IMG/VR virus record: IMGVR_UViG_3300045970_000794
Span: 298,103-362,102 of that record
Length of the DNA stretch: 64,000 nt
Strand: one strand, 5' to 3'
The notes under the pieces are model-generated. The model had not been told where the DNA came from. It searched no databases and was given only the letters and a program-made list of their open reading frames with translations. Shown one piece after another: positions 48,776 to 58,642 of this stretch; the first letter of the stretch is position 1, and each line of letters starts with the position of its first letter. The translations under genes and the position numbers were made by a program.

Positions 48776-49000
48776 TTAAAGATATTTTGAATTGTAATAA
48801 GTTTCTGGCGTATCATTTAATAATATCTTCAAATCACCTAAAATTAATTCATTTATTTCTTTTTTCAATTTTAATTTACACCCCATTAATTTAATTGCTT
48901 CATATGTGCGATTAGGAAATAAACTAATTAATTCATTTTTAGTTGAATTTTTATACGTTTTAATTAATAAATTAATTTCTTTTTGACTCCATTTTATCAT
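48776..49000 (-). pseudogene. truncated homing-endonuclease-like gene
   Basis: WS..EI.LL...Y HTH-like start; ends just after LLNDTPETYY, where a W.G...ADG motif would be expected. Confidence 0.45.
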
Positions 49001-49119
49001 TTTGGTATTTATTTAGATTGTTGTTATCCTTTTAATATACCTTGATATTGAAAAAATCAACTTACTATAAAAATAAATTTGATAATTGAATGAACCCGCA
49101 TATATTCCAATTTTTCTCA

Positions 49120-49653
49120 TTATTCAAAATTTAGTTTAGTTTTACAATACTCAAAAAAGGTTAAACCACTCTTAGTTAAATCATCAAACATAAACTTAGC
49201 ATAACCCATATATTTACCAATAGCGTTCATATCTAACTGCATTGGCGAATCATCAATACGACCATTTAATTTATAAAATGTCATTGTCGCATACTTTTCA
49301 GCAAATCGTTCTTCTTCAATTAAATGATTTAAAAAATCCTCATATACTGTAATAGCACCAACTAAACTATCAATAGCATCAACACCTATTTTACGAATTC
49401 TAAGATAGTGACCAATCTCATGTAAAATAATATGATATTGATTAACCAATGAAACGTATCTGATTTCATTTAAATTTAATATGATACTAATTGGGTTAGT
49501 AGCGGCAAATGCTCTAGAATATGGTGGTGGAAATTTATACGCCTTAATTGGTATGTTCTCTTTATCAATTAAATCCACCAATCCAGTGAAATTTAAATTA
49601 TCAGCATTACCTAATGAAATTAAGTAATCTCTAACTGAAATATCTTCATTCAT
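49120..49653 (-). CDS. zinc metallopeptidase-like protein (HExxH)
   Basis: ILHEIGHY ... EERFAE. Confidence 0.7.
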   Translation of the reverse strand: MNEDISVRDYLISLGNADNLNFTGLVDLIDKENIPIKAYKFPPPYSRAFAATNPISIILNLNEIRYVSLVNQYHIILHEIGHYLRIRKIGVDAIDSLVGAITVYEDFLNHLIEEERFAEKYATMTFYKLNGRIDDSPMQLDMNAIGKYMGYAKFMFDDLTKSGLTFFEYCKTKLNFE

Positions 49654-49757
49654 AATTTAAAACATTAAAAATTTAAGTACCATTAATTCGTTTAATAGCA
49701 CTTTTGCAAAGATACATATATTTATTTAATATAACAAGTATTTTTAAACTTATTTTT

Positions 49758-50540
49758 ATGAAAATTTTTAGTCAAGAAGAAATTAATGAAATTATTAGAT
49801 TATACACTATTGATATGTTAGGTACACCAACGATTGGTAAAAAGTTTAATATCAGTAAAAGAACCATCAATAATTTATTAAATAAAAATAATATTATTAT
49901 TGGTAAATCTGGTGGTAAATTTAAGGGTGGTAAAAAAATATCTGATAAAAAATATCGTGAAAAAAATAAAGAAAAAGCTAAAAAATACCAAGAAAACTAT
50001 CACCCTATATATTATCAAGAAAACAAAGAAATGCTAATTGATAAACATAAAACATATCGTGAAAATAATAAAGAAAAAGAGCAAATACGACATAAAATAT
50101 ATCGTGAAAATAATGCAGATAAAATTAAAATATATCGAATTTCGTATAAAGAAATTAGAAATTTAAAACATATTGAAAAAATGAAAATAAACCCACTTTA
50201 TAAATTAAAACATAATATTCGAGGTTTAATAAAAAATGGATTTAAAAGTAAATATTATATTAAACAATCTAAAACACAAGATATTTTAGGTTGTTCGTTT
50301 GAAGAATTTAAACTACATCTTGAATCACAATTTGAAAATTGGATGAACTGGGATAATTTTGGTAACTCTATTGATGGTATTATTGAACCAAATAAAACTT
50401 GGGATATTGACCATATTATTCCAATATCTTTAGCTAAAACAGAGGAAGATATAATTAAATTAAACCATTTCACTAATTTACAGCCGCTATGTAGTTATGA
50501 AAATCGTTTCATTAAACGAAATAAATTACTAAAAACATAA
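49758..50540 (+). CDS. HNH endonuclease
   Basis: ILGCS.EE.K.HLE.QF, WDIDHIIP, LNHFTNLQPL. Confidence 0.85.
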   Translation: MKIFSQEEINEIIRLYTIDMLGTPTIGKKFNISKRTINNLLNKNNIIIGKSGGKFKGGKKISDKKYREKNKEKAKKYQENYHPIYYQENKEMLIDKHKTYRENNKEKEQIRHKIYRENNADKIKIYRISYKEIRNLKHIEKMKINPLYKLKHNIRGLIKNGFKSKYYIKQSKTQDILGCSFEEFKLHLESQFENWMNWDNFGNSIDGIIEPNKTWDIDHIIPISLAKTEEDIIKLNHFTNLQPLCSYENRFIKRNKLLKT

Positions 50541-50889
50541 ATAATATTACAGTCACACCAATAATAAACCCATTGAAAAAATCAGCTGGGCTAAATTTAA
50601 TAATTGTTTTTTTATTGTAATTATCTAATAGTGAACCATATATCCGTTTGGAGCAGCTTCCAATTAGTTGCATTGTGATGGGTCCATGAGCATTTATCGT
50701 TTGCCTTAGGGCTCCATTAATCTTATTTAATTCAATCTTCTTAACTCTTCTTAACTTCTCAATGGTATTCAAGTTATCCTTTTCATACTCATCGAAAATA
50801 GCTATTAATTGTTCGATATCTTTTTTAGAGAATTCATTAACAAGCTTTTGTTCCAATCTACCTTTTCTGGTTCTTATTACATTAAACAT
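50512..50889 (-). CDS. hypothetical protein with C-terminal TM segment
   Basis: 125-aa ORF. Confidence 0.65.
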   Translation of the reverse strand: MFNVIRTRKGRLEQKLVNEFSKKDIEQLIAIFDEYEKDNLNTIEKLRRVKKIELNKINGALRQTINAHGPITMQLIGSCSKRIYGSLLDNYNKKTIIKFSPADFFNGFIIGVTVILFMFLVIYFV

Positions 50890-50912
50890 TTAGTTCTTTT
50901 ATAATAAATATC

Positions 50913-51311
50913 CTAATCTAATTCTAAATGACTAGTTATTTTATCAATTTCATCAGCCCAAAATGGACCAATTCCAACGCAAGTATTTGTTGGATTACCT
51001 TTAAATTCAGTCAACCCAGCATCAGTGATTAAAATTGATGGGATTTTAGCTGATTGTGCGGCCGCATAAATGCTTAATAGTTCAGCTTCATCTTTACATT
51101 TAACAACAATTTTAGTGAATCGGCCATTTAACCAATTGTCCCAAGCACCACCTTTTTTAAGATGTAATATGAATTTACATGGGTCAAGTGTGCGCATAGC
51201 ATTAACTAATACCGCAACTGAAGCATGGGCAACTTGTGCACCATATTTACCACGTCTAACCTTTAAATCATTCCTCCAAACTAAAACCATTTTTGTTTTC
51301 CTATTTTCCAT
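50913..51311 (-). CDS. pth2: peptidyl-tRNA hydrolase, Pth2 family
   Basis: R.DL...GK..AQVAHA, KIVVK, DAGLTE, TCVGIGP, ID.IT..L. Confidence 0.92.
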   Translation of the reverse strand: MENRKTKMVLVWRNDLKVRRGKYGAQVAHASVAVLVNAMRTLDPCKFILHLKKGGAWDNWLNGRFTKIVVKCKDEAELLSIYAAAQSAKIPSILITDAGLTEFKGNPTNTCVGIGPFWADEIDKITSHLELD

Positions 51312-51318
51312 AATAAAA

Positions 51319-52146
51319 TTAAGATTTATATGTTTGATTATCTTTTAAAATTCGTCTTATCAAATAAATACTAATATTAAACATTTCAGATAATTGTTTA
51401 GTAACTTTAAAACCATTATTTTTATATTCACTAATAATTTCGTTAATGACTGCATTATCAAATTCAACATAATTTGGATTCCCACTTTTCAATTTACTAT
51501 TTGACATTAAAATTCTACCATTTTCAGTAATATCAGTACGCTTACCATTAATATCTAATCTTTTTTTACAACTAGAACTAATTAATTTTTTAAATGAATC
51601 AGTTTTATAATAACTATTTTCTGATTGTTTTTTTTTAATTTCATTAGCTTTAATTTCACCATATCTTTCAACATAATTTAATTTTAATTGCTCAATCATT
51701 TTATTTGCTTTTTCTTCACCCCAACGCTCAACAAGTGTTTTATCTTTTTGAAAATCAGATAATTTTTTACGCTGTTCATTAGTAAGTGGCTTGCGAATTT
51801 GTTCTTTTGATTTTTCACCAATAATTCGTTTAGTTTCTTCACTATGCTTCCAGCCACTACAACCATGACCACCTTTAGTTGAATTATATCCTTCACCAAT
51901 AAAAGTATTGTATTTTTCAATATAATAAATTTCTAAATAATTTAAATCATCAACCGATACAACCCCCTCCAATACTTCCCATTCAAAATTATCAGGTCCA
52001 TATTTTTTAATTGCACGATGAAAATGATATTTTGACCCACGCAATGCATTTTTAATGTGTTGATTTTTACGCTCTTCTAATGTTTTAATGGTCTGACCAA
52101 TATATTTCAATCCATTAATTTTGTTTGTTACTAAATAAATTACCAT
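51319..52146 (-). CDS. GIY-YIG homing endonuclease with NUMOD3-like motif
   Basis: VIY..TN..NG.KYIGQT, GYN.T.GG, HSEETKR.I. Confidence 0.88.
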   Translation of the reverse strand: MVIYLVTNKINGLKYIGQTIKTLEERKNQHIKNALRGSKYHFHRAIKKYGPDNFEWEVLEGVVSVDDLNYLEIYYIEKYNTFIGEGYNSTKGGHGCSGWKHSEETKRIIGEKSKEQIRKPLTNEQRKKLSDFQKDKTLVERWGEEKANKMIEQLKLNYVERYGEIKANEIKKKQSENSYYKTDSFKKLISSSCKKRLDINGKRTDITENGRILMSNSKLKSGNPNYVEFDNAVINEIISEYKNNGFKVTKQLSEMFNISIYLIRRILKDNQTYKS

Positions 52147-52229
52147 ATTTATATGTTTATATATAAATATAATGAATATTCTAAAAAGTCAAAGTATCAT
52201 TACCCCACACAATGACTTGTTTAACTTTT

Positions 52230-52745
52230 TTATTTAAAATAAATATCTTTATATAAATCGATAAAATAATTCCCAATATAATAAGCCAAATCTTCACTTT
52301 TTAAATAAAGGGCCGAGGGAACAATCATATCACTAATATTGTAATCAGTGCTATAACAGGAAAACACACCGCTATTTTTATTAAAATAAGCGAAATATTT
52401 CATTTGAGAGTCATTATCCCAATCTGGATACCAGCCTTCATTTAATGCTTCGATAATTATACTTAATTTATAATAAGCAATTAAATGTTTATCTTTAAGC
52501 AATTTTAAGTCAATTGGTATTATATTAAGTTTAATACAAGCATCTTCAAACGAAGTAACACCCAATTTTTCACCAAAAATATATAAATTAGCTTTTATTA
52601 TTTTATTTCGTTCATTTAAATCGCCAACGCCTAAAATATCAAATATTTCATCTGAGTTTTTAATTGATATATAACTGAACTTTTCTTTAATTGTGGTAAT
52701 CCACCCATCAAAAGTTTGGTGTGGATTATAAAAATCTGGTTTCAT
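52230..52745 (-). CDS. DGR target protein 2
   Basis: Contains VR2; paralog of 53885-54436 (SFEDAC..L, ALNEGWYPD). Confidence 0.9.
   Translation of the reverse strand: MKPDFYNPHQTFDGWITTIKEKFSYISIKNSDEIFDILGVGDLNERNKIIKANLYIFGEKLGVTSFEDACIKLNIIPIDLKLLKDKHLIAYYKLSIIIEALNEGWYPDWDNDSQMKYFAYFNKNSGVFSCYSTDYNISDMIVPSALYLKSEDLAYYIGNYFIDLYKDIYFK
52312..52373 (-). repeat. DGR variable repeat VR2
   Basis: 8 differences from TR, all at TR adenines. Confidence 0.93.
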
Positions 52746-53691
52746 TTATATGTTTTTTAAGTAAATGTTTTCCGTTACAATGTTTAATCCAACCATTATA
52801 TGATGCAAATGACTTTTTATTAGGATTATTTTTCATCATCCGAATGAAATTTATTTTAATACCTTTTCGTAATAATATATGGGTATGATAAAATTTATAC
52901 CCAACAAAATCAACACCTCTATCTTTAACTGGAAATATCTGATAATTAGATTTTATTTTTAATAATAGTTTAGATTCAATATACCACTTAATATCACCTA
53001 ATAATTTATGTAATTCACTTTTACTAGATGAGAATATTACCATATCATCAGCATATCTAAAATAATATTTAACTAATTTTTCTTCTTTTAACCAATGGTC
53101 AAAATATGTTAAATATAAATTAGCAAAATACTGACTAGTATAATTACCTATTGGTAGACCATCCGTTGAATCAATAATCTCATCTAATAACCATAATAAA
53201 TCACTATCTTTTATTTTTCGTCTAATTATTGATTTTAGTATATCATGACTAATACTAGGATAAAATTTACTAATATCTAATTTTAAACAATATTCAGTAT
53301 TTTCAATATCTTTTAATGATTTTTTAACCGCATTAGCGGCACCATGTATTCCCCTACCTTTTATGCAACTATAAGTGTTACTAGTAAATATATTTACAAA
53401 TATCGGTTCCAAAATATTCATAATCGCATGATGGATAATTCTATCTGGATAATATGGTAAGGAAAAAATTAAACGTTCTTTACCCTCATTTATAATAAAG
53501 GTTTTATATTTAGATGTTTTAAATGTTTTATTAATTAATGATTCATGTAATCTTAAAATATTTAAATTTCTATCTTTATCAAATGAAATAACATCACATC
53601 TATTTTTCTTACCTTTTCTAGCTTTAGAATCAGCCAATTCTAAATTTTCAATAGATATTATTTTATCATATAAATTATTAAATCGTTTCAT
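52726..53691 (-). CDS. DGR reverse transcriptase
   Basis: KLDISKFYPSI, GLPIGNYTSQYFAN, RYADD; start MKRFNNLY at 53691. Confidence 0.95.
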   Translation of the reverse strand: MKRFNNLYDKIISIENLELADSKARKGKKNRCDVISFDKDRNLNILRLHESLINKTFKTSKYKTFIINEGKERLIFSLPYYPDRIIHHAIMNILEPIFVNIFTSNTYSCIKGRGIHGAANAVKKSLKDIENTEYCLKLDISKFYPSISHDILKSIIRRKIKDSDLLWLLDEIIDSTDGLPIGNYTSQYFANLYLTYFDHWLKEEKLVKYYFRYADDMVIFSSSKSELHKLLGDIKWYIESKLLLKIKSNYQIFPVKDRGVDFVGYKFYHTHILLRKGIKINFIRMMKNNPNKKSFASYNGWIKHCNGKHLLKKHINETRFL

Positions 53692-53803
53692 CCCTTTGTT
53701 ATTAATAGTTACGGTCTCTAATGATACTAGCACCTATTTAAAATTTAAATTTTTTACCATGTTGGTAAGGTTTATGTTATTAAGTAAGATTTAATAACAA
53801 GTT

Positions 53804-53865
53804 GCTGAGGGAACATTCATATTACTATTATTGTAATTAGTGTTATAATATGAAAACACACCGCT
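53804..53865 (-). ncRNA. DGR template repeat (TR)
   Basis: Intergenic AAY-rich copy: AGCGGTGTGTTTTCATATTATAACACTAATTACAATAATAGTAATATGAATGTTCCCTCAGC. Confidence 0.93.
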
Positions 53866-53884
53866 AATAACATAAACCAGAATT

Positions 53885-54436
53885 TTACATATAAAGTATC
53901 TCATACTCTCTAAGCGCAATTTTAATAGCATGTTTAGCTAATCCTTCGCTTTTTAAATAAAGGGCCGAGGGAACATTCATATTACTAATATTGAAATAAG
54001 TGTAATAATATGAAAACACACCGCTTTTAATTTCAAACCAATTATAATATTTATAATCATTTTTAGTAAAATCTGGATACCAACCTTCATTTAATGCTTT
54101 AATAATCGTTTTTAATTTTTTATATGCAATATCATTTGGTGTATCATATTGTAAACTAAATACTCCGTTCTGGTCTACATTAAGAACATTACAAGCATCC
54201 TCAAATGACTTAACTCGCTCAATAATGTTTTTTTCTTGTTTGAAAAACTTAGATAAAACAATTTTTTGTTTCTCATCTGATGCTGCAAACATTTCATTTA
54301 CTTCATTCTCAGTGAATTCAATGAACTCATCAAAATGATTCCGACTAGCATATTCTTCCAATTTTTTTTTCCAACTAAAACATGCAATGTCATGTATTAA
54401 TTTTAAATTTTTTCTAGATATTTGTTGTGTTTTCAT
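53885..54436 (-). CDS. DGR target protein 1
   Basis: Contains VR1; first gene after promoter at 54459. Confidence 0.9.
   Translation of the reverse strand: MKTQQISRKNLKLIHDIACFSWKKKLEEYASRNHFDEFIEFTENEVNEMFAASDEKQKIVLSKFFKQEKNIIERVKSFEDACNVLNVDQNGVFSLQYDTPNDIAYKKLKTIIKALNEGWYPDFTKNDYKYYNWFEIKSGVFSYYYTYFNISNMNVPSALYLKSEGLAKHAIKIALREYEILYM
53964..54025 (-). repeat. DGR variable repeat VR1
   Basis: 5 differences from TR, all at TR adenines. Confidence 0.93.
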
Positions 54437-54501
54437 AATTTAATTATTTAATTTAATGCAAAGATATAAAAAATATTTTAATCTACCAAATAAAAATACA
54501 A

Positions 54502-55020
54502 CTATTTTTTTGGTATTGGTTTAAGCATAATAATTAATCTAGTACCTTCAAAAACTGGGGTTTTTTCAGCGATACAAACACCAGAGAGTTCATTAATCAC
54601 TTTCTCTAATATTTGATACCCGAATTCTTTATGAGACATTTCACGGCCTTTAAAAAAGACTGAGGTTTTAACTAAATTACCTTTAATTAACCACTCCTTA
54701 GCATGTTTAAGTTTAAAATTTAAATCATTCTCATCGATAGCTGGTCTTAATCTTAATTCTTTAACCTCAACCTTAACTGGTTTCTTCTCAGCTTTTTTCT
54801 TTTCGTAAATATATTTTTCAAAATCAACTACTTTACAGATTGAGATTTCTGGATTATTAGCATTTATTTCTAATAAATCTAGGTCTAGGTCATCAGCAAT
54901 TTTAATAGCTTCTTGAAGTGAGTAAATACCCACAGTTACATTATCACCAACAAGTCTAACTTGTTTAGCTCTAATATCGGAATTGATTTTATACCGATTA
55001 AATTTATTTTTTTCTTTCAT
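54502..55020 (-). CDS. infC: translation initiation factor IF-3
   Basis: IN..IRA..VRLVG, A...DLDL.EI, VKELRLRP.IDE.D..FK, FFKGRE. Confidence 0.93.
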   Translation of the reverse strand: MKEKNKFNRYKINSDIRAKQVRLVGDNVTVGIYSLQEAIKIADDLDLDLLEINANNPEISICKVVDFEKYIYEKKKAEKKPVKVEVKELRLRPAIDENDLNFKLKHAKEWLIKGNLVKTSVFFKGREMSHKEFGYQILEKVINELSGVCIAEKTPVFEGTRLIIMLKPIPKK

Positions 55021-55137
55021 TTAATTTTTTAGAAATTATTATTTAAATACAAAAGTATAAAAATAAATACAATAATGCAAATTATTTATTTTTTTTATAA
55101 TTTTATTATATTTATAAGTATAAACAAATTATAACAT

Positions 55138-55308
55138 ATGGAAAAAAATAGGCAGCGGTCACGTAAAAATGATGAAAATAAAACAGATTCAATGACAATT
55201 AGAATTGAACCTAAATTAAAAGAGCAATATTTGAAATTTTGTGAAGATAATGGATATTCATATGGAAAACGGTTGAGATTATTAATTAAAAAAGATTTAG
55301 ATAAATGA
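55138..55308 (+). CDS. small ribbon-helix-helix protein (56 aa, not in ORF track)
   Basis: MTIRIEPKLKEQY..FC..NG.S...RLR.LI; ATGA overlap with next gene. Confidence 0.65.
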   Translation: MEKNRQRSRKNDENKTDSMTIRIEPKLKEQYLKFCEDNGYSYGKRLRLLIKKDLDK

Positions 55309-56177
55309 GTAAAAAATTAACAATTGATGAGATAATTAATAAAATTATTGATAATGATTACGATTTTTCACAATCAAATTATGTATCATTAGATAAAAAA
55401 ATAATCGTAATTGATATTGACGGGTTTGAGCATTTAATAAGACCAGATAGTTTATTAGTTGGAAATAAATTAAATATTAAAAGTGTTATCAATAAAGAAA
55501 ATTATTTAATTAAAAAATTTAATAAAATTCACAAAAATTTATTTGATTATTCTAAATTCACATATATAAATTCTGACACTAAAATTGATATCATATGTCA
55601 GACCCACGGTATTTTTAAACAAACTATTAATAATCATTTAAGAGGTAAAGGATGTCCTAAATGTAATGGTAAAAATAAAAGTAATAATGATATTATCAAT
55701 GAGTTTAAATCAACTCATGGTAATAAATACAATTATTCAAAAGTAACATATAGTGGGATTAAAAATAAAGTAATTATTATATGTCCAAAACATGGTGAAT
55801 TTAAACAATCACCAGAGGAACATATTAAAGGTTGTGGATGTCCAATCTGTAAAGAATCTAATGGTGAACGTAAAATTAGGTTATTTTTAGAATCAAATAA
55901 TGTTTCATATATACCACAACATAAATTTAATGATTGTAAAAATATATTAAGTTTACCATTTGACTTCTATTTACCTGATTATAATACATGTATCGAATAT
56001 CAAGGTGAACAGCATTATAGACCTATCGAATATTTTGGTGGTATTAAACAATTCAATAAACAAATAATTAATGATAAAATAAAAATGGAATATTGCCAAA
56101 ACAACAATATTCCATTAATAATGATTAAATATGGTGAAAACATATTTGAAACATTAAAAAAATTTTCTAATATTTAA
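55305..56177 (+). CDS. putative homing endonuclease (DUF723-like repeats + nuclease domain)
   Basis: Same architecture as 37345-38439. Confidence 0.8.
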   Translation: MSKKLTIDEIINKIIDNDYDFSQSNYVSLDKKIIVIDIDGFEHLIRPDSLLVGNKLNIKSVINKENYLIKKFNKIHKNLFDYSKFTYINSDTKIDIICQTHGIFKQTINNHLRGKGCPKCNGKNKSNNDIINEFKSTHGNKYNYSKVTYSGIKNKVIIICPKHGEFKQSPEEHIKGCGCPICKESNGERKIRLFLESNNVSYIPQHKFNDCKNILSLPFDFYLPDYNTCIEYQGEQHYRPIEYFGGIKQFNKQIINDKIKMEYCQNNNIPLIMIKYGENIFETLKKFSNI

Positions 56178-57741
56178 ATGTTGTGAAATCGCCATTGGAA
56201 AATGTGATTAATTGAGCCTTACCATCTTGATGTATTATACAATGTGTTTGAGACCAACTACTTGGGCCTTCATTATACCCCACTCTAAGGTTTGTTGATG
56301 TTCCAACTTGTAGAACACCATCCTTTCTACCGCAACTATGGCTATGTCCAATAATCATCTTAGTATTTAATCTTCTAAATTGTTCTAATGAACCCCTAGA
56401 ACCATTAGCACCTACATCACCATGTTGAGCTAATTCCCATTTTTTAACTACATAACTATCTGAGCGATTTAACGTCTTAATTTTAGGGTAGTGTTTCTTA
56501 ATTATCCATGGAATTACACCATCTTTAGCTTCACCACTCAATATCGCAGCACTATATTGCATATATTCCAATGAATTTTTTGGGGTATTAGTTTTACGCC
56601 AATCGGTATTGATTAACCAACGGTCAACAAAATCATCATGGTTACTTCTAACAATAACAACATTATAGTTTTTGAATTTATCTAATTCGACTAACATTTC
56701 ATCAACTTCGTTTTTCAATGAATTTTTATTATTCATTTCTTTCTCATATTGAGTGAATGGGTTATCCATTTCATGATGATTAATTGAATGACCATTGAAT
56801 ATATCATGCATAATAACATGTTGTGGCTTTAATCTATTCAATAATTCTAACGTTTTTTCAATAACTTCATTGTCTTGGTCACCAACATGGTAATCACCCA
56901 AAACTATAGCGGCCGCTGAATCAATCGTTGTAACTTCACCTTTATCAACTCTATAAAATAAATCAGTAAAAGCACCAGCTTCATTGGCAGTTACCTGTCT
57001 TGCAAAAAATATTTCATCATCTTTTATTTCAACCACTACAAACCCGTATGTATGATGAAACTCACCCTTTTTACCAGCTTTAGAATCAGTGTAATCCTTA
57101 ATGGTGACAGCACCAGTGGTCATCATCATTTTAGGCTTTTGCGTATGTAACACAGGAATTGACATCATTTGCACTTTAGGTGCACCAAAAATACAAGAAT
57201 TAATACCTGACACACCTTCTAACCCAGACATTGGATTTACAGCTGTTGGTTGAATCTTAAAATCACCCATAATAGAAACGTACTTATGAACATTATGTCT
57301 AGCCGCATCTAAATATGGTAGGACTTCTTTTTCCCAATACTCATAATCTTTATCTGTGAAGATTGATGTTGGGTTTTTGTATCTACCAGCGATGATGTGG
57401 ATATCCGCATCTAAAAACTCAGCATATGCTTCCATATTTCTTAAAAGCCTTGTATGCACAGCGGTATTATTCTGGGCCCAACTAATAAGGAATCTTTTCT
57501 TTTCTTTATTAAAAACTCGCTGTTTAGCAAGTTCATATTGTTCTGAAGGTGTTTCAGTTACTTTTTCTTTAAAATGTAATCGTTCAAACCATTTTCGAAT
57601 AGTTCGTTCCGATACACCTAATTGAAGACCCAAATTAAATGCAATTTTTTCAACAGTTAAATTTGAATCTTTCCGACCATAATAAGCGTTTTTTAATGTT
57701 ATCTTATCTTGTTCAGTTAATTTTTTAAAACTTTTTTTCAT
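56167..57741 (-). CDS. metallophosphoesterase with N-terminal HTH
   Basis: GDYH, HD, SNHD, HGD, GHSH; VSERTIRKW. Confidence 0.8.
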   Translation of the reverse strand: MKKSFKKLTEQDKITLKNAYYGRKDSNLTVEKIAFNLGLQLGVSERTIRKWFERLHFKEKVTETPSEQYELAKQRVFNKEKKRFLISWAQNNTAVHTRLLRNMEAYAEFLDADIHIIAGRYKNPTSIFTDKDYEYWEKEVLPYLDAARHNVHKYVSIMGDFKIQPTAVNPMSGLEGVSGINSCIFGAPKVQMMSIPVLHTQKPKMMMTTGAVTIKDYTDSKAGKKGEFHHTYGFVVVEIKDDEIFFARQVTANEAGAFTDLFYRVDKGEVTTIDSAAAIVLGDYHVGDQDNEVIEKTLELLNRLKPQHVIMHDIFNGHSINHHEMDNPFTQYEKEMNNKNSLKNEVDEMLVELDKFKNYNVVIVRSNHDDFVDRWLINTDWRKTNTPKNSLEYMQYSAAILSGEAKDGVIPWIIKKHYPKIKTLNRSDSYVVKKWELAQHGDVGANGSRGSLEQFRRLNTKMIIGHSHSCGRKDGVLQVGTSTNLRVGYNEGPSSWSQTHCIIHQDGKAQLITFSNGDFTTFKY

Positions 57742-57742
57742 T

Positions 57743-58642
57743 TTAATTTTTTTTTAAAAGACTTATTATTTTATTAGGAATCTCATTATATTTAATTATA
57801 ATTAGATTTATATTATTTTTATCACAATATTTTTTTTTAATCACATCATTTAATTTAACATCAATTAAATACTTTTCACCACCAAAAAATTCAATTGGCT
57901 TATAATGTTGAATTCCGTTAAATTCGATGCATGTATTATAATCTGGTAAATAAAAATCAAATGGTAATGGTAGTTTATTTCTACATTCATTAAATTTATG
58001 TTGCGGAATGAATTTGATATTATTTTCCAATAATAGTAGTCGAATATTATTTTCACCTTTACTTTCTTTACAGATTGGACAACCAACACCTTTCAAATGA
58101 TTATGGGGCGTTTGGATAAATTCACCATGTTTAGGGCAAATAATTGTTATTTTGACATGTGATGTTATGTACTTAATTTTAGAATAGTCATATATTTCAC
58201 CATGAATTAACTTAGCTTTTTCAATAAAACACTTATTACCAACCCTTCTATTAAGAAAAGTACATTTTTCACAACGGCTACCTTTTAAATGATTATTTGG
58301 GGTTTGTTCAAACTCACCATGGGTGGGACATATTATTTTAATATTAGTGTTAAAATTAATATAATTAACCAATGAGTAATCATATTCATCACCATGAATT
58401 AACTTAGCTTTTTCGATAAAACACTTATTACCTAATCTCTGTTTTACATAACTACATTTTTTACATCCATCACCACTTAAATGAGCACTAGCCCTTTGAT
58501 TAAATATACCATGCTCTTTGCAAATAATATTCACATAATTTTTACTTTCAGTATAATTAACTAATGAATAATCATATTTTTCACCATGAATTAACTTAGC
58601 TTTTTCTATAAACTTTAAATTTTTTTCTAACATACTTACCAT
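57743..58642 (-). CDS. putative homing endonuclease (DUF723-like repeats + nuclease domain)
   Basis: FIEKAKLIHG..YDYS x3; FDFYLP...IEFNG.QH. Confidence 0.8.
   Translation of the reverse strand: MVSMLEKNLKFIEKAKLIHGEKYDYSLVNYTESKNYVNIICKEHGIFNQRASAHLSGDGCKKCSYVKQRLGNKCFIEKAKLIHGDEYDYSLVNYINFNTNIKIICPTHGEFEQTPNNHLKGSRCEKCTFLNRRVGNKCFIEKAKLIHGEIYDYSKIKYITSHVKITIICPKHGEFIQTPHNHLKGVGCPICKESKGENNIRLLLLENNIKFIPQHKFNECRNKLPLPFDFYLPDYNTCIEFNGIQHYKPIEFFGGEKYLIDVKLNDVIKKKYCDKNNINLIIIKYNEIPNKIISLLKKN

What the first reader, a model, noticed from the sequence alone, without database searches (positions are those of the whole stretch)
53754..53878. TR enclosed by a perfect 14-bp inverted repeat that competes with a local hairpin
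Seen: GGTTTATGTTATTA (53769-53782) pairs with TAATAACATAAACC (53865-53878), closing the TR in a loop. The same segment can instead pair locally (TGTTATTAA 53775-53783 with TTAATAACA 53791-53799). An adjacent hairpin is TTACCA-tgt-TGGTAA (53754-53768). Inference: an RNA scaffold or switch for priming and termination of cDNA synthesis, perhaps replacing accessory-protein function.
Basis: partly seen in the sequence, partly recalled or inferred. Interest (0 to 1): 0.6.

Follow-up and report, generated by a model that had tools for sequence, protein, structure and literature searches.

The report
Template-enclosing RNA stem of a phage DGR
The inverted repeat is real and is the conserved RNA helix that clamps the template of a phage diversity-generating retroelement; it matches the "stop" element known from the Bordetella phage, here in a lineage that has no Avd helper protein.

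Summary
The window is the end of a 362-kb pond jumbo phage. Its DGR reads target1/VR1, TR (53866..53804), RT (53691..52726), target2/VR2.

The 14-bp repeat (53878..53865 with 53782..53769) pairs the RNA just 5' of the TR with the spacer 3' of it. It is followed directly by a hairpin (53768..53754) and an A-run.

More than 100 related DGRs, mostly Bacteroidota prophages, have the same architecture with different arm sequences:
- About 95-97% of pair cells form standard pairs, against 70-76% in shuffles.
- There are hundreds of compensatory changes, and G.U outnumbers A.C by about 7-10 to 1.
- A covariance model built without the window finds it at E=2.5e-13.

This matches the "cPRT Stop" of the Bordetella phage DGR RNA (Handa et al.): a long-range duplex, an adjacent stem-loop and adenosines. 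The rest of the spacer is a divergent Rfam RT-17 motif.

No Avd gene was found in the phage, and the RNA has no room for an Avd-binding hairpin. The competing local hairpin exists only in this phage and is thermodynamically minor, so the switch idea is not supported. Verdict: a new variant of a known kind, of moderate interest.

The parts
53885..54436 (-). Target gene 1 (183 aa, phrog_11581), carrying VR1 near its C-terminus. Its stop codon lies 6 nt before the 5' arm.
   Evidence: ORF list; PHROG hit; translation.
53964..54026 (-). VR1, the copy of the TR at an offset of +160. All differences in the core fall at TR adenines.
53865..53878 (-). 5' arm of the TR-enclosing duplex (GGUUUAUGUUAUUA). 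Its last 1-2 nt are the first nt of TR/VR homology. The first two G form the family-invariant G:C pairs.
53804..53866 (-). Template repeat (TR). Its 3' end (about 53811..53797) is IMH*-like, with fixed differences from both VRs.
53784..53803 (-). 20-nt linker between the TR and the 3' arm, with no room for an Avd-binding stem-loop. Positions 53799..53791 form the 5' strand of the window-specific competing hairpin.
53769..53783 (-). 3' arm of the duplex (UUAAUAACAUAAACC): 14 Watson-Crick pairs plus one G.U. It ends in the invariant CC.
53754..53768 (-). Stem-loop directly adjacent to the duplex (UUACCAacaUGGUAA). The A-U pair here replaces the family's G-C pair, a compensatory change.
53750..53755 (-). 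A-run after the stem-loop (five family columns A in 46-52 of 52 sequences, three of them invariant). These are candidate A-minor donors to the GG/CC pairs.
   Evidence: analogy
53705..53737 (-). Conserved 3' spacer stem with a UAGUA internal loop, a small hairpin and GA(A). This is the RT-17/RT-14-like domain. By position it is the analogue of the RT-binding stem-loop.
52726..53691 (-). DGR reverse transcriptase (321 aa from the ATG at 53691; IGNYTSQ and YADD motifs). The GTG at 53733 is an ORF-caller artefact that overlaps the conserved RNA.
52230..52745 (-). Target gene 2 (171 aa), a paralogue of target 1, with VR2 at 52312-52374. All 8 of 8 differences fall at TR adenines.

Best explanation
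The inverted repeat forms a long-range RNA helix in the DGR transcript on the minus strand. It joins the segment just 5' of the template repeat to the spacer 3' of it, so the TR is looped out.

Together with the adjacent stem-loop and the following adenosines, it is the counterpart of the cPRT Stop of the Bordetella phage DGR RNA. Inferred from that system, the helix sets the 5' limit of cDNA synthesis, and the two invariant G:C pairs next to the hairpin receive the adenosines as A-minor contacts. The whole module, with the downstream RT-17-like stem, docks on the reverse transcriptase so that the 3' end of the TR is placed for cis-priming.

Shown here: the helix, hairpin, A-run and 3' stem are conserved, covarying RNA features of a large DGR clade in which no Avd was found, and the window's element belongs to it. 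Inferred only: the stop, priming and A-minor roles, and binding to the RT.
For: - DGR identity. TR/VR1 and TR/VR2 differ only at TR adenines in the core. The RT carries IGNYTSQ and YADD.
- Fold. The MFE and centroid both keep the duplex and the hairpin, with pair probability 0.95.
- Unbiased alignment. RNAalifold on a plain MAFFT alignment of 52 loci returns a 12-bp bulged duplex around the TR plus the adjacent hairpin. Thirteen of 15 pairs show double compensatory changes.
- Controls on that alignment. 97.4% of cells are paired, against 76% in shuffles and 35-48% with slid partners.
- Independent IMG/VR set. 95.0% against 70.5%, with 313 double-change cells and 0 of 500 shuffles as high.
- Diversity and strand. 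There are 80 distinct arm cores. G.U to A.C is 51:5 and 72:11, so pairing is at RNA level on the RT-sense strand.
- Conserved receptor and donors. The GG/CC pairs next to the hairpin never change in the 52-sequence alignment and are near-invariant (72 of 77 and 73 of 76 cells G:C) in the independent set. The A-run is nearly invariant.
- Membership. A model built without the window hits 53884..53740(-) at 67 bits, E=2.5e-13, as the only significant hit in 64 kb.
- Stop role. TR/VR homology starts 0-29 nt (median 10) after the 5' arm in 50 of 51 relatives, and at the arm's inner end in the window.
- Precedent. In the Bordetella phage, an avd:Sp duplex of 11 bp with one unpaired base, a stem-loop, and A80/A81 A-minor contacts into the C68/C69:G pairs stop cDNA synthesis just before the duplex and are required for priming.
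- Spacer. The downstream spacer covaries and is Rfam RT-17 in relatives.
Against: - No RNA, cDNA or activity data exist for this phage. The public runs are DNA contigs only.
- No conserved template:primer duplex could be found between the linker and the TR, so how priming is set up in this clade is unknown.
[quoted passage not shown] The mechanism cannot be identical.
- In the Bordetella phage, compensatory mutations in the duplex did not restore activity, so pairing alone is not the whole story.
- The window's match to Rfam RT-17 is below the gathering score (25.1 against 40.4 bits).
Confidence: 0.75

Rival explanations
1. Two-state switch. The 3' arm alternates between the 5' arm (closed form) and the local partner 53799..53791. 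This toggles priming or termination.
For: The 9-bp hairpin is real and unlikely for this linker by chance (p about 0.01). Its 5' strand lies at the IMH*-like 3' end of the TR, where the Bordetella template strand lies. Six base pairs of the long helix could coexist with it, stacked as in the Bordetella RNP.
Against: It is absent from 51 relatives, where the best alternative helices are 3-6 bp and equal to chance, and from the closest AT-rich relatives L083, L099 and L115. Its ensemble probability is 0.03 against 0.95. The family shows no conserved alternative pairing.
Confidence: 0.1
2. A general RNA stability, processing or expression element. The helix protects or delimits the TR transcript, or tunes RT translation, without a direct role in reverse transcription.
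For: A long closing helix would stabilise the RNA. The conserved AAAGCAAAGG box and the 3' stem lie just before the RT start codon.
Against: The architecture matches, piece by piece, an element shown to act in reverse transcription. TR/VR homology always stops at the helix. The invariant GG/CC pairs and A-run point to a specific tertiary fold.
Confidence: 0.1
3. A DNA-level element: a cruciform, a recombination site or transposon-like ends around the TR.
For: It is a perfect inverted repeat in DNA.
Against: G.U pairs outnumber A.C pairs by about 7-10 to 1, which makes sense only for RNA of one strand. The relatives' helices carry a bulge and wobbles. The repeat lies inside a transcribed gene cluster with no terminator-like site.
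Confidence: 0.02
4. A chance repeat in AT-rich DNA.
For: About 0.29 such repeats are expected per 64 kb.
Against: Its placement around the TR is exact. It is conserved with covariation in more than 100 loci. The match to a model built without the window has E=2.5e-13.
Confidence: 0.01

Closest known systems
cPRT Stop of the Bordetella phage BPP-1 DGR RNA (Handa et al., bioRxiv 10.1101/2023.10.23.563531; cited elsewhere as Nature 2025, 638:1122)
   Same: Both have a duplex between the sequence upstream of the TR and the spacer downstream of it: 11 bp plus one unpaired base in BPP-1, 12 bp plus a bulge in this family, 14 bp in the window. In both, the spacer strand ends in CC, runs into a short stem-loop and is followed by unpaired adenosines. 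The G:C pairs next to the hairpin are the A-minor receptors in BPP-1 and are conserved (nearly invariant) here. cDNA synthesis in BPP-1, and TR/VR homology here, stop just inside the duplex. A further stem-loop precedes the RT gene.
   Different: - No Avd gene and no Avd-binding stem-loop. The linker is 5-23 nt, against 46 nt in BPP-1.
- No recognisable template:primer duplex.
- The hairpin has 4-6 bp, not 2 bp with a UNCG loop.
- The 5' arm lies after a target-gene stop codon, not inside avd.
- There is no sequence similarity.
- Function is shown only for BPP-1. The published survey covered only DGRs with Avd and used single-sequence folding.
Rfam RT-17 (RF03020) and RT-14 (RF02921) motifs (Weinberg et al. 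2017, PMC5737381)
   Same: The spacer from the CC of the 3' arm to the RT start aligns over the full length of RT-17. It includes the hairpin, the A-run, the UGGUA/UAGUA loop and GAA. Relatives L075, L057, L068 and L137 score above the gathering threshold.
   Different: The window scores below gathering (25.1 against 40.4 bits, and 28.3 against 48.1). RT-17 holds no 5' arm, so the TR-enclosing helix is not part of the family. The authors gave RT-17 no function and tied only RT-10 to a DGR.
Retron msr-msd RNA with its a1/a2 inverted repeats (own knowledge)
   Same: Inverted repeats flank the template of a bacterial RT. Priming is from a 2'-OH next to the closing helix. The structure sets where cDNA synthesis starts and stops.
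   Different: It is a different RT clade. The product is a branched msDNA, with no adenine mutagenesis and no homing into a VR. The RNA structures are not homologous.
Template boundary elements of telomerase RNA (own knowledge)
   Same: A helix beside the template physically limits how far the RT copies.
   Different: It is eukaryotic, unrelated in sequence, and does not enclose the whole template.

Membership tests
Diversity-generating retroelement | A TR/VR pair whose differences fall at TR adenines | tested here: met
   VR1 has 5 of 5 core differences at A, and VR2 has 8 of 8. The same holds in 75 related loci.
Diversity-generating retroelement | An RT of the DGR type ([LIV]GxxxSQ in motif 4, YxDD) | tested here: met
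   IGNYTSQ at residues 180-187 and YADD at 213. RVT_1 scores 9e-21. The RT is 55-72% identical to RTs next to adenine-specific TR/VR pairs.
Diversity-generating retroelement | Avd accessory gene (common but not universal) | tested here: not met
   PF05635 has no hit in the whole 362-kb genome. Pfam, PHROGs and NCBIfam give no hit for neighbouring ORFs. A very divergent Avd could escape these profiles. Avd-less lineages are known.
cPRT Stop element of DGR RNA | A duplex between sequences upstream and downstream of the TR | tested here: met
   14 bp plus a G.U pair in the window. It is conserved with covariation.
cPRT Stop element of DGR RNA | A stem-loop directly after the spacer strand of the duplex | tested here: met
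   53768..53754, directly after the duplex in the window (one unpaired base intervenes in most relatives). It covaries (GC/AU/CG).
cPRT Stop element of DGR RNA | Unpaired adenosines after the stem-loop that dock into G:C pairs of the duplex | tested here: inconclusive
   The A-run and the conserved GG/CC pairs are present. The tertiary contact itself cannot be tested by sequence.
cPRT Stop element of DGR RNA | cDNA synthesis ends just before the duplex, and the element is needed for priming | not testable with these tools
   There is only indirect support: TR/VR homology never runs through the arm.
BPP-1-type DGR RNA as a whole | An Avd-binding stem-loop at the 5' end of the spacer | tested here: not met
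   The linker is 20 nt in the window and 5-23 nt in relatives, with no conserved hairpin.
BPP-1-type DGR RNA as a whole | A template:primer duplex between the TR 3' end and the spacer just before the stop helix | tested here: inconclusive
   No conserved pairing was found (median p 0.73). Only four pairs are essential in BPP-1, which is too few to detect.
Rfam RT-17 (RF03020) | A score at or above the gathering threshold | tested here: not met
   The window scores 25.1 bits against 40.4 (E=0.007-0.011) with a full-length alignment. Four relatives pass.
TR-enclosing RNA family of this RT clade (models R1, R2) | A significant full-length match to a model built without the window | tested here: met
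   R2 scores 67 bits, E=2.5e-13, covering model positions 1-159.

The most novel reading that the evidence does not exclude
In this Avd-less phage DGR, one RNA segment would do two jobs. The 5' half of the 3' arm alternately pairs with the 5' arm (full 14-bp closed form) and with the IMH*-like 3' end of the TR. That second pairing is a 9-bp hairpin stacked on the remaining 6-bp stop helix, and it would create the template:primer duplex that Avd helps to position in the Bordetella phage. More broadly, Avd-less DGRs would run on the RT plus a compact RNA of about 190 nt alone.
Probability: 0.1. Interest if true: 0.7.

Novelty: new variant of a known kind. Interest (0 to 1): 0.45.

Why it matters
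The only DGR whose reverse transcription is understood in structural detail needs Avd. About a quarter to a third of DGRs have no accessory gene, and how they work is an open question (Wu et al. 2018).

This clade shows that the cPRT-Stop architecture survives without Avd while the Avd-binding hairpin is missing. The architecture is the long-range helix, the hairpin, the adenosines and the conserved G:C receptor pairs. It is backed here by real covariation rather than single-sequence folds.

Two practical points follow:
- It gives a function to an orphan Rfam motif (RT-17).
- It defines a very compact system for reconstitution or for engineering targeted mutagenesis: a 321-aa RT plus about 190 nt of RNA.

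The window's own element is one more member of this family, so the general point matters more than this single locus.

Tried and rejected
- Competing hairpin as a family feature: rejected. Relatives have only chance-level alternatives.
- Linker:TR primer duplex: none is conserved. The 9-bp TR:spacer pairing seen in the window's MFE (p=0.12) cannot be the priming duplex, because TR adenines 3' of it are mutated in VR2.
- Expression or activity from public reads: there are only four DNA runs, from pond and soil metagenomes, kept as contigs. None is RNA and no variants were listed. A second sample has the TR, the stems and VR1 identical. This says nothing about activity.
It was replaced by R2, built from 20 loci.
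- The published Nature version of Handa et al. (PMC11995886) is not held. I relied on the June 2024 preprint, so I cannot say whether the final paper also surveyed Avd-less DGRs.
- Rfam at gathering threshold over the window: nothing.
- Terminator reading: no terminator-like site, and the hairpin is followed by A, not U.
- Avd near the relatives' DGRs: PF05635 genes are common in Bacteroidota genomes. Six of 30 genomes have none, and in three genomes where the DGR lies on a large numbered contig (L004, L019, L033) no hit lies within about 200 kb of it, assuming C1 is that contig. For draft genomes, positions could not be mapped.
- Assignment of the clade to Wu et al.'s Lineage 3 is an inference from its traits. 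It was not tested against their data.

Full report
**What is at the locus**

The window is the last 64 kb (298103-362102) of a 362,102-bp virus record with direct terminal repeats, rated complete. It is about 30% G+C and was found in pond metagenomes.

Around the finding, all genes are on the minus strand:
- A 183-aa ORF at 54436..53885.
- A 150-nt gap that contains the TR.
- A reverse transcriptase.
- A 171-aa paralogue of the first ORF at 52745..52230.

The TR (53866..53804) has one copy in the first ORF (VR1, offset +160) and one in the second (VR2, 52374..52312). The core differences are 5 of 5 and 8 of 8 at TR adenines. The RT has the DGR hallmarks IGNYTSQ and YADD. Relatives align from its residue 15, so the true start is the ATG at 53691, not the GTG at 53733. 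This is a DGR with two targets.

**The observation**

On the transcribed strand the order is as follows:
- The stop codon of target 1, then 6 nt.
- The 5' arm GGUUUAUGUUAUUA (53878..53865).
- The TR, then a 20-nt linker.
- The 3' arm UUAAUAACAUAAACC (53783..53769).
- The hairpin UUACCAacaUGGUAA (53768..53754), followed by AAAA.

The MFE and the centroid both contain the long duplex and the hairpin, with pair probabilities of 0.95. It is the only perfect inverted repeat of 14 bp or more with a loop of 150 nt or less in the window. Simulations expect 0.29 per 64 kb, so the repeat alone proves little.

**Relatives settle the question**

The RT has 80 relatives in a genome collection (mostly Bacteroidota) and 80 kept in IMG/VR (mostly 30-55-kb phage contigs). 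They are 55-72% identical. Seventy-five of the first 81 loci (the 80 relatives plus the window) have a TR within about 150 nt of the RT and one to four VRs with adenine-specific differences.

Nearly all show the same layout: A-rich sequence, GGYKG plus a variable 8-mer, the TR, a short A/U-rich linker, the complement of the 8-mer plus RRCC, a 4-6-bp hairpin, and AAAAA.

A plain MAFFT alignment of 52 loci was folded by RNAalifold. It gave a 12-bp helix with one bulged G around the TR, plus the hairpin. Thirteen of 15 pairs had compensatory double changes.

| Measure | A1: 51 relatives, window left out | A3: 80 IMG/VR loci not used for the model |
|---|---|---|
| Cells forming a standard pair | 97.4% | 95.0% |
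| Same, in shuffles | 76% | 70.5% |
| Same, with slid partners | 35-48% | 33-46% |
| Covariation score, observed vs shuffled | 0.66 vs 0.22 | 0.332 vs 0.100 |
| Cells with a change on both sides | not counted | 313 |
| Shuffles reaching the observed value | 0 of 1000 | 0 of 500 |

A3 is fitted to the model's structure, so it leans slightly towards that structure.

There are 80 different 8-nt arm cores. G.U pairs outnumber A.C by 51:5 and 72:11, so the pairing is at RNA level on the RT-sense strand.

A covariance model built from 20 IMG/VR loci, without the window, finds 53884..53740(-) at 67 bits, E=2.5e-13. It is a full-length match and the only significant hit in 64 kb. The window's version is bulge-less and 2 bp longer, like L143.

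**What it corresponds to**

Handa et al. solved the Bordetella phage bRT-Avd-RNA complex. Its cPRT Stop has three parts:
- A duplex between avd sequence upstream of the TR and spacer residues 59-70, with 11 pairs and one unpaired U.
- A short stem-loop at residues 71-78.
- Unpaired A80 and A81, which insert into the minor groove of the G:C pairs formed by C69 and C68 at the hairpin-proximal end.

In that system cDNA synthesis stops just before the duplex, and the element is also required for priming.

The family here has the same parts in the same order. The two G:C pairs next to the hairpin never change in A1 and are 72 of 77 and 73 of 76 in A3, while the other ten pairs covary. In the five columns after the hairpin, A is present in 46-52 of 52 sequences.

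TR/VR homology begins 0-29 nt (median 10) after the 5' arm in 50 of 51 relatives, and at the arm's inner end in the window. This fits a stop.

The rest of the spacer also covaries. It holds a three-part stem with an invariant GGUA/AGUA loop and GAA, then an AAAGCAAAGG box before the ATG. That part is Rfam RT-17. Four relatives pass the gathering score, while the window scores 25.1 bits against 40.4. Weinberg et al. left RT-17 without a function and linked only RT-10 to a DGR.

**How it differs**

- No Avd. PF05635 has no hit in the complete phage genome, and nearby ORFs have no Avd-like hit in Pfam, PHROGs or NCBIfam.
- Among 30 relatives' genomes, six have no PF05635 gene at all. In three genomes where the DGR lies on a large numbered contig, no hit lies within about 200 kb of the DGR.
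- Wu et al. described such accessory-free DGRs (Architecture A, 29%) and an Avd-less Lineage 3, whose sublineage 3A is confined to Bacteroides and its relatives. That this clade is Lineage 3 is my inference.
- The Avd-binding stem-loop of the Bordetella spacer (residues 3-33) has no counterpart. The linker is only 5-23 nt.
- The survey by Handa et al. covered only DGRs with Avd and used single-sequence folding.

**What remains open**

I found no conserved pairing that could be the template:primer duplex. Only four pairs are essential in the Bordetella phage, which is too few to detect.

The last 16 nt or so of the TR are IMH*-like. TR adenines there are never kept in the VRs (0 of 71, 0 of 82, 0 of 66), even at a synonymous Leu position. 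Upstream adenines map to all four bases. Priming should therefore occur in or after this stretch.

**The switch idea**

The 9-bp local hairpin is real and unlikely for this linker by chance (p about 0.01). No relative has anything comparable, including the closest AT-rich ones. It is worth -4.7 against -15.9 kcal/mol, and 0.03 against 0.95 in the ensemble.

Its 5' strand does lie where a template strand would be expected. A window-specific priming conformation therefore cannot be excluded, and I give it about 10%.

**No direct data**

The public runs are DNA contigs. None is RNA, and no VR variants are visible. The TR, the stems and VR1 are identical in a second pond sample.

**Verdict**

The switch is unsupported. 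The point of interest is that the element persists, with strong covariation, in a lineage without Avd.

Noticed in passing
window 52230-52745 (-), VR2 at 52312-52374: A second target gene lies directly after the RT and overlaps its end. It is a paralogue of target 1 (same phrog_11581) with its own VR, and 8 of 8 differences fall at TR adenines. One TR therefore serves two targets that flank the RT.
   Followed up: partly
window 53797-53811 (-); alignment A1 columns 133-148 in relatives: The last 16 nt or so of the TR differ from all VRs by fixed changes. TR A becomes VR G, G and T, and is never kept as A (0 of 71, 0 of 82, 0 of 66 pairs), even at a synonymous Leu codon. Upstream adenines map to all four bases. 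This looks like an IMH/IMH* pair in which every TR-specific base is an adenine.
   Followed up: partly
window 53692-53733 (-): The ORF caller starts the RT at GTG 53733. The first 14 codons overlap the conserved spacer RNA, and relatives align only from the ATG at 53691. The conserved AAAGCAAAGG-like box lies just before that ATG.
   Followed up: yes
window 49000-58000: The DGR sits among translation-related and selfish genes of a 362-kb phage: IF3 (54502-55020), peptidyl-tRNA hydrolase PTH2 (50913-51311), a GIY-YIG endonuclease (51319-52146) and an HNH/DUF4379 homing endonuclease (55305-56177). G+C drops to 24-26% here, against about 30% elsewhere.
   Followed up: partly
L036, L043, L045, L046, L048, L050, L051, L053, L058, L061, L073 and others (spacer upstream of the RT): In a gut Bacteroidales subfamily with a TR of about 116 nt, the hairpin next to the duplex is expanded by a 50-60-nt insertion with further hairpins. 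A conserved 129-aa ORF of unknown function (phrog_11557, no Pfam hit) follows the RT. It may be the CH1 accessory gene of Wu et al.'s Lineage 3a.
   Followed up: no
window 52277-52892 in run X2: The second pond sample has identical contigs over the TR, VR1 and most of the RT, but none over VR2 and the RT 3' end. This could be an assembly break at a heterogeneous VR2 or a strain difference. Contigs cannot tell.
   Followed up: no
window 53700-53788 (-): There is also a sub-threshold match to Rfam RT-14 (28.3 bits against 48.1). RT-14 has the same CC-hairpin-AAAA-stem design, so RT-14 and RT-17 may be sister spacer RNAs of related DGR lineages.
   Followed up: partly
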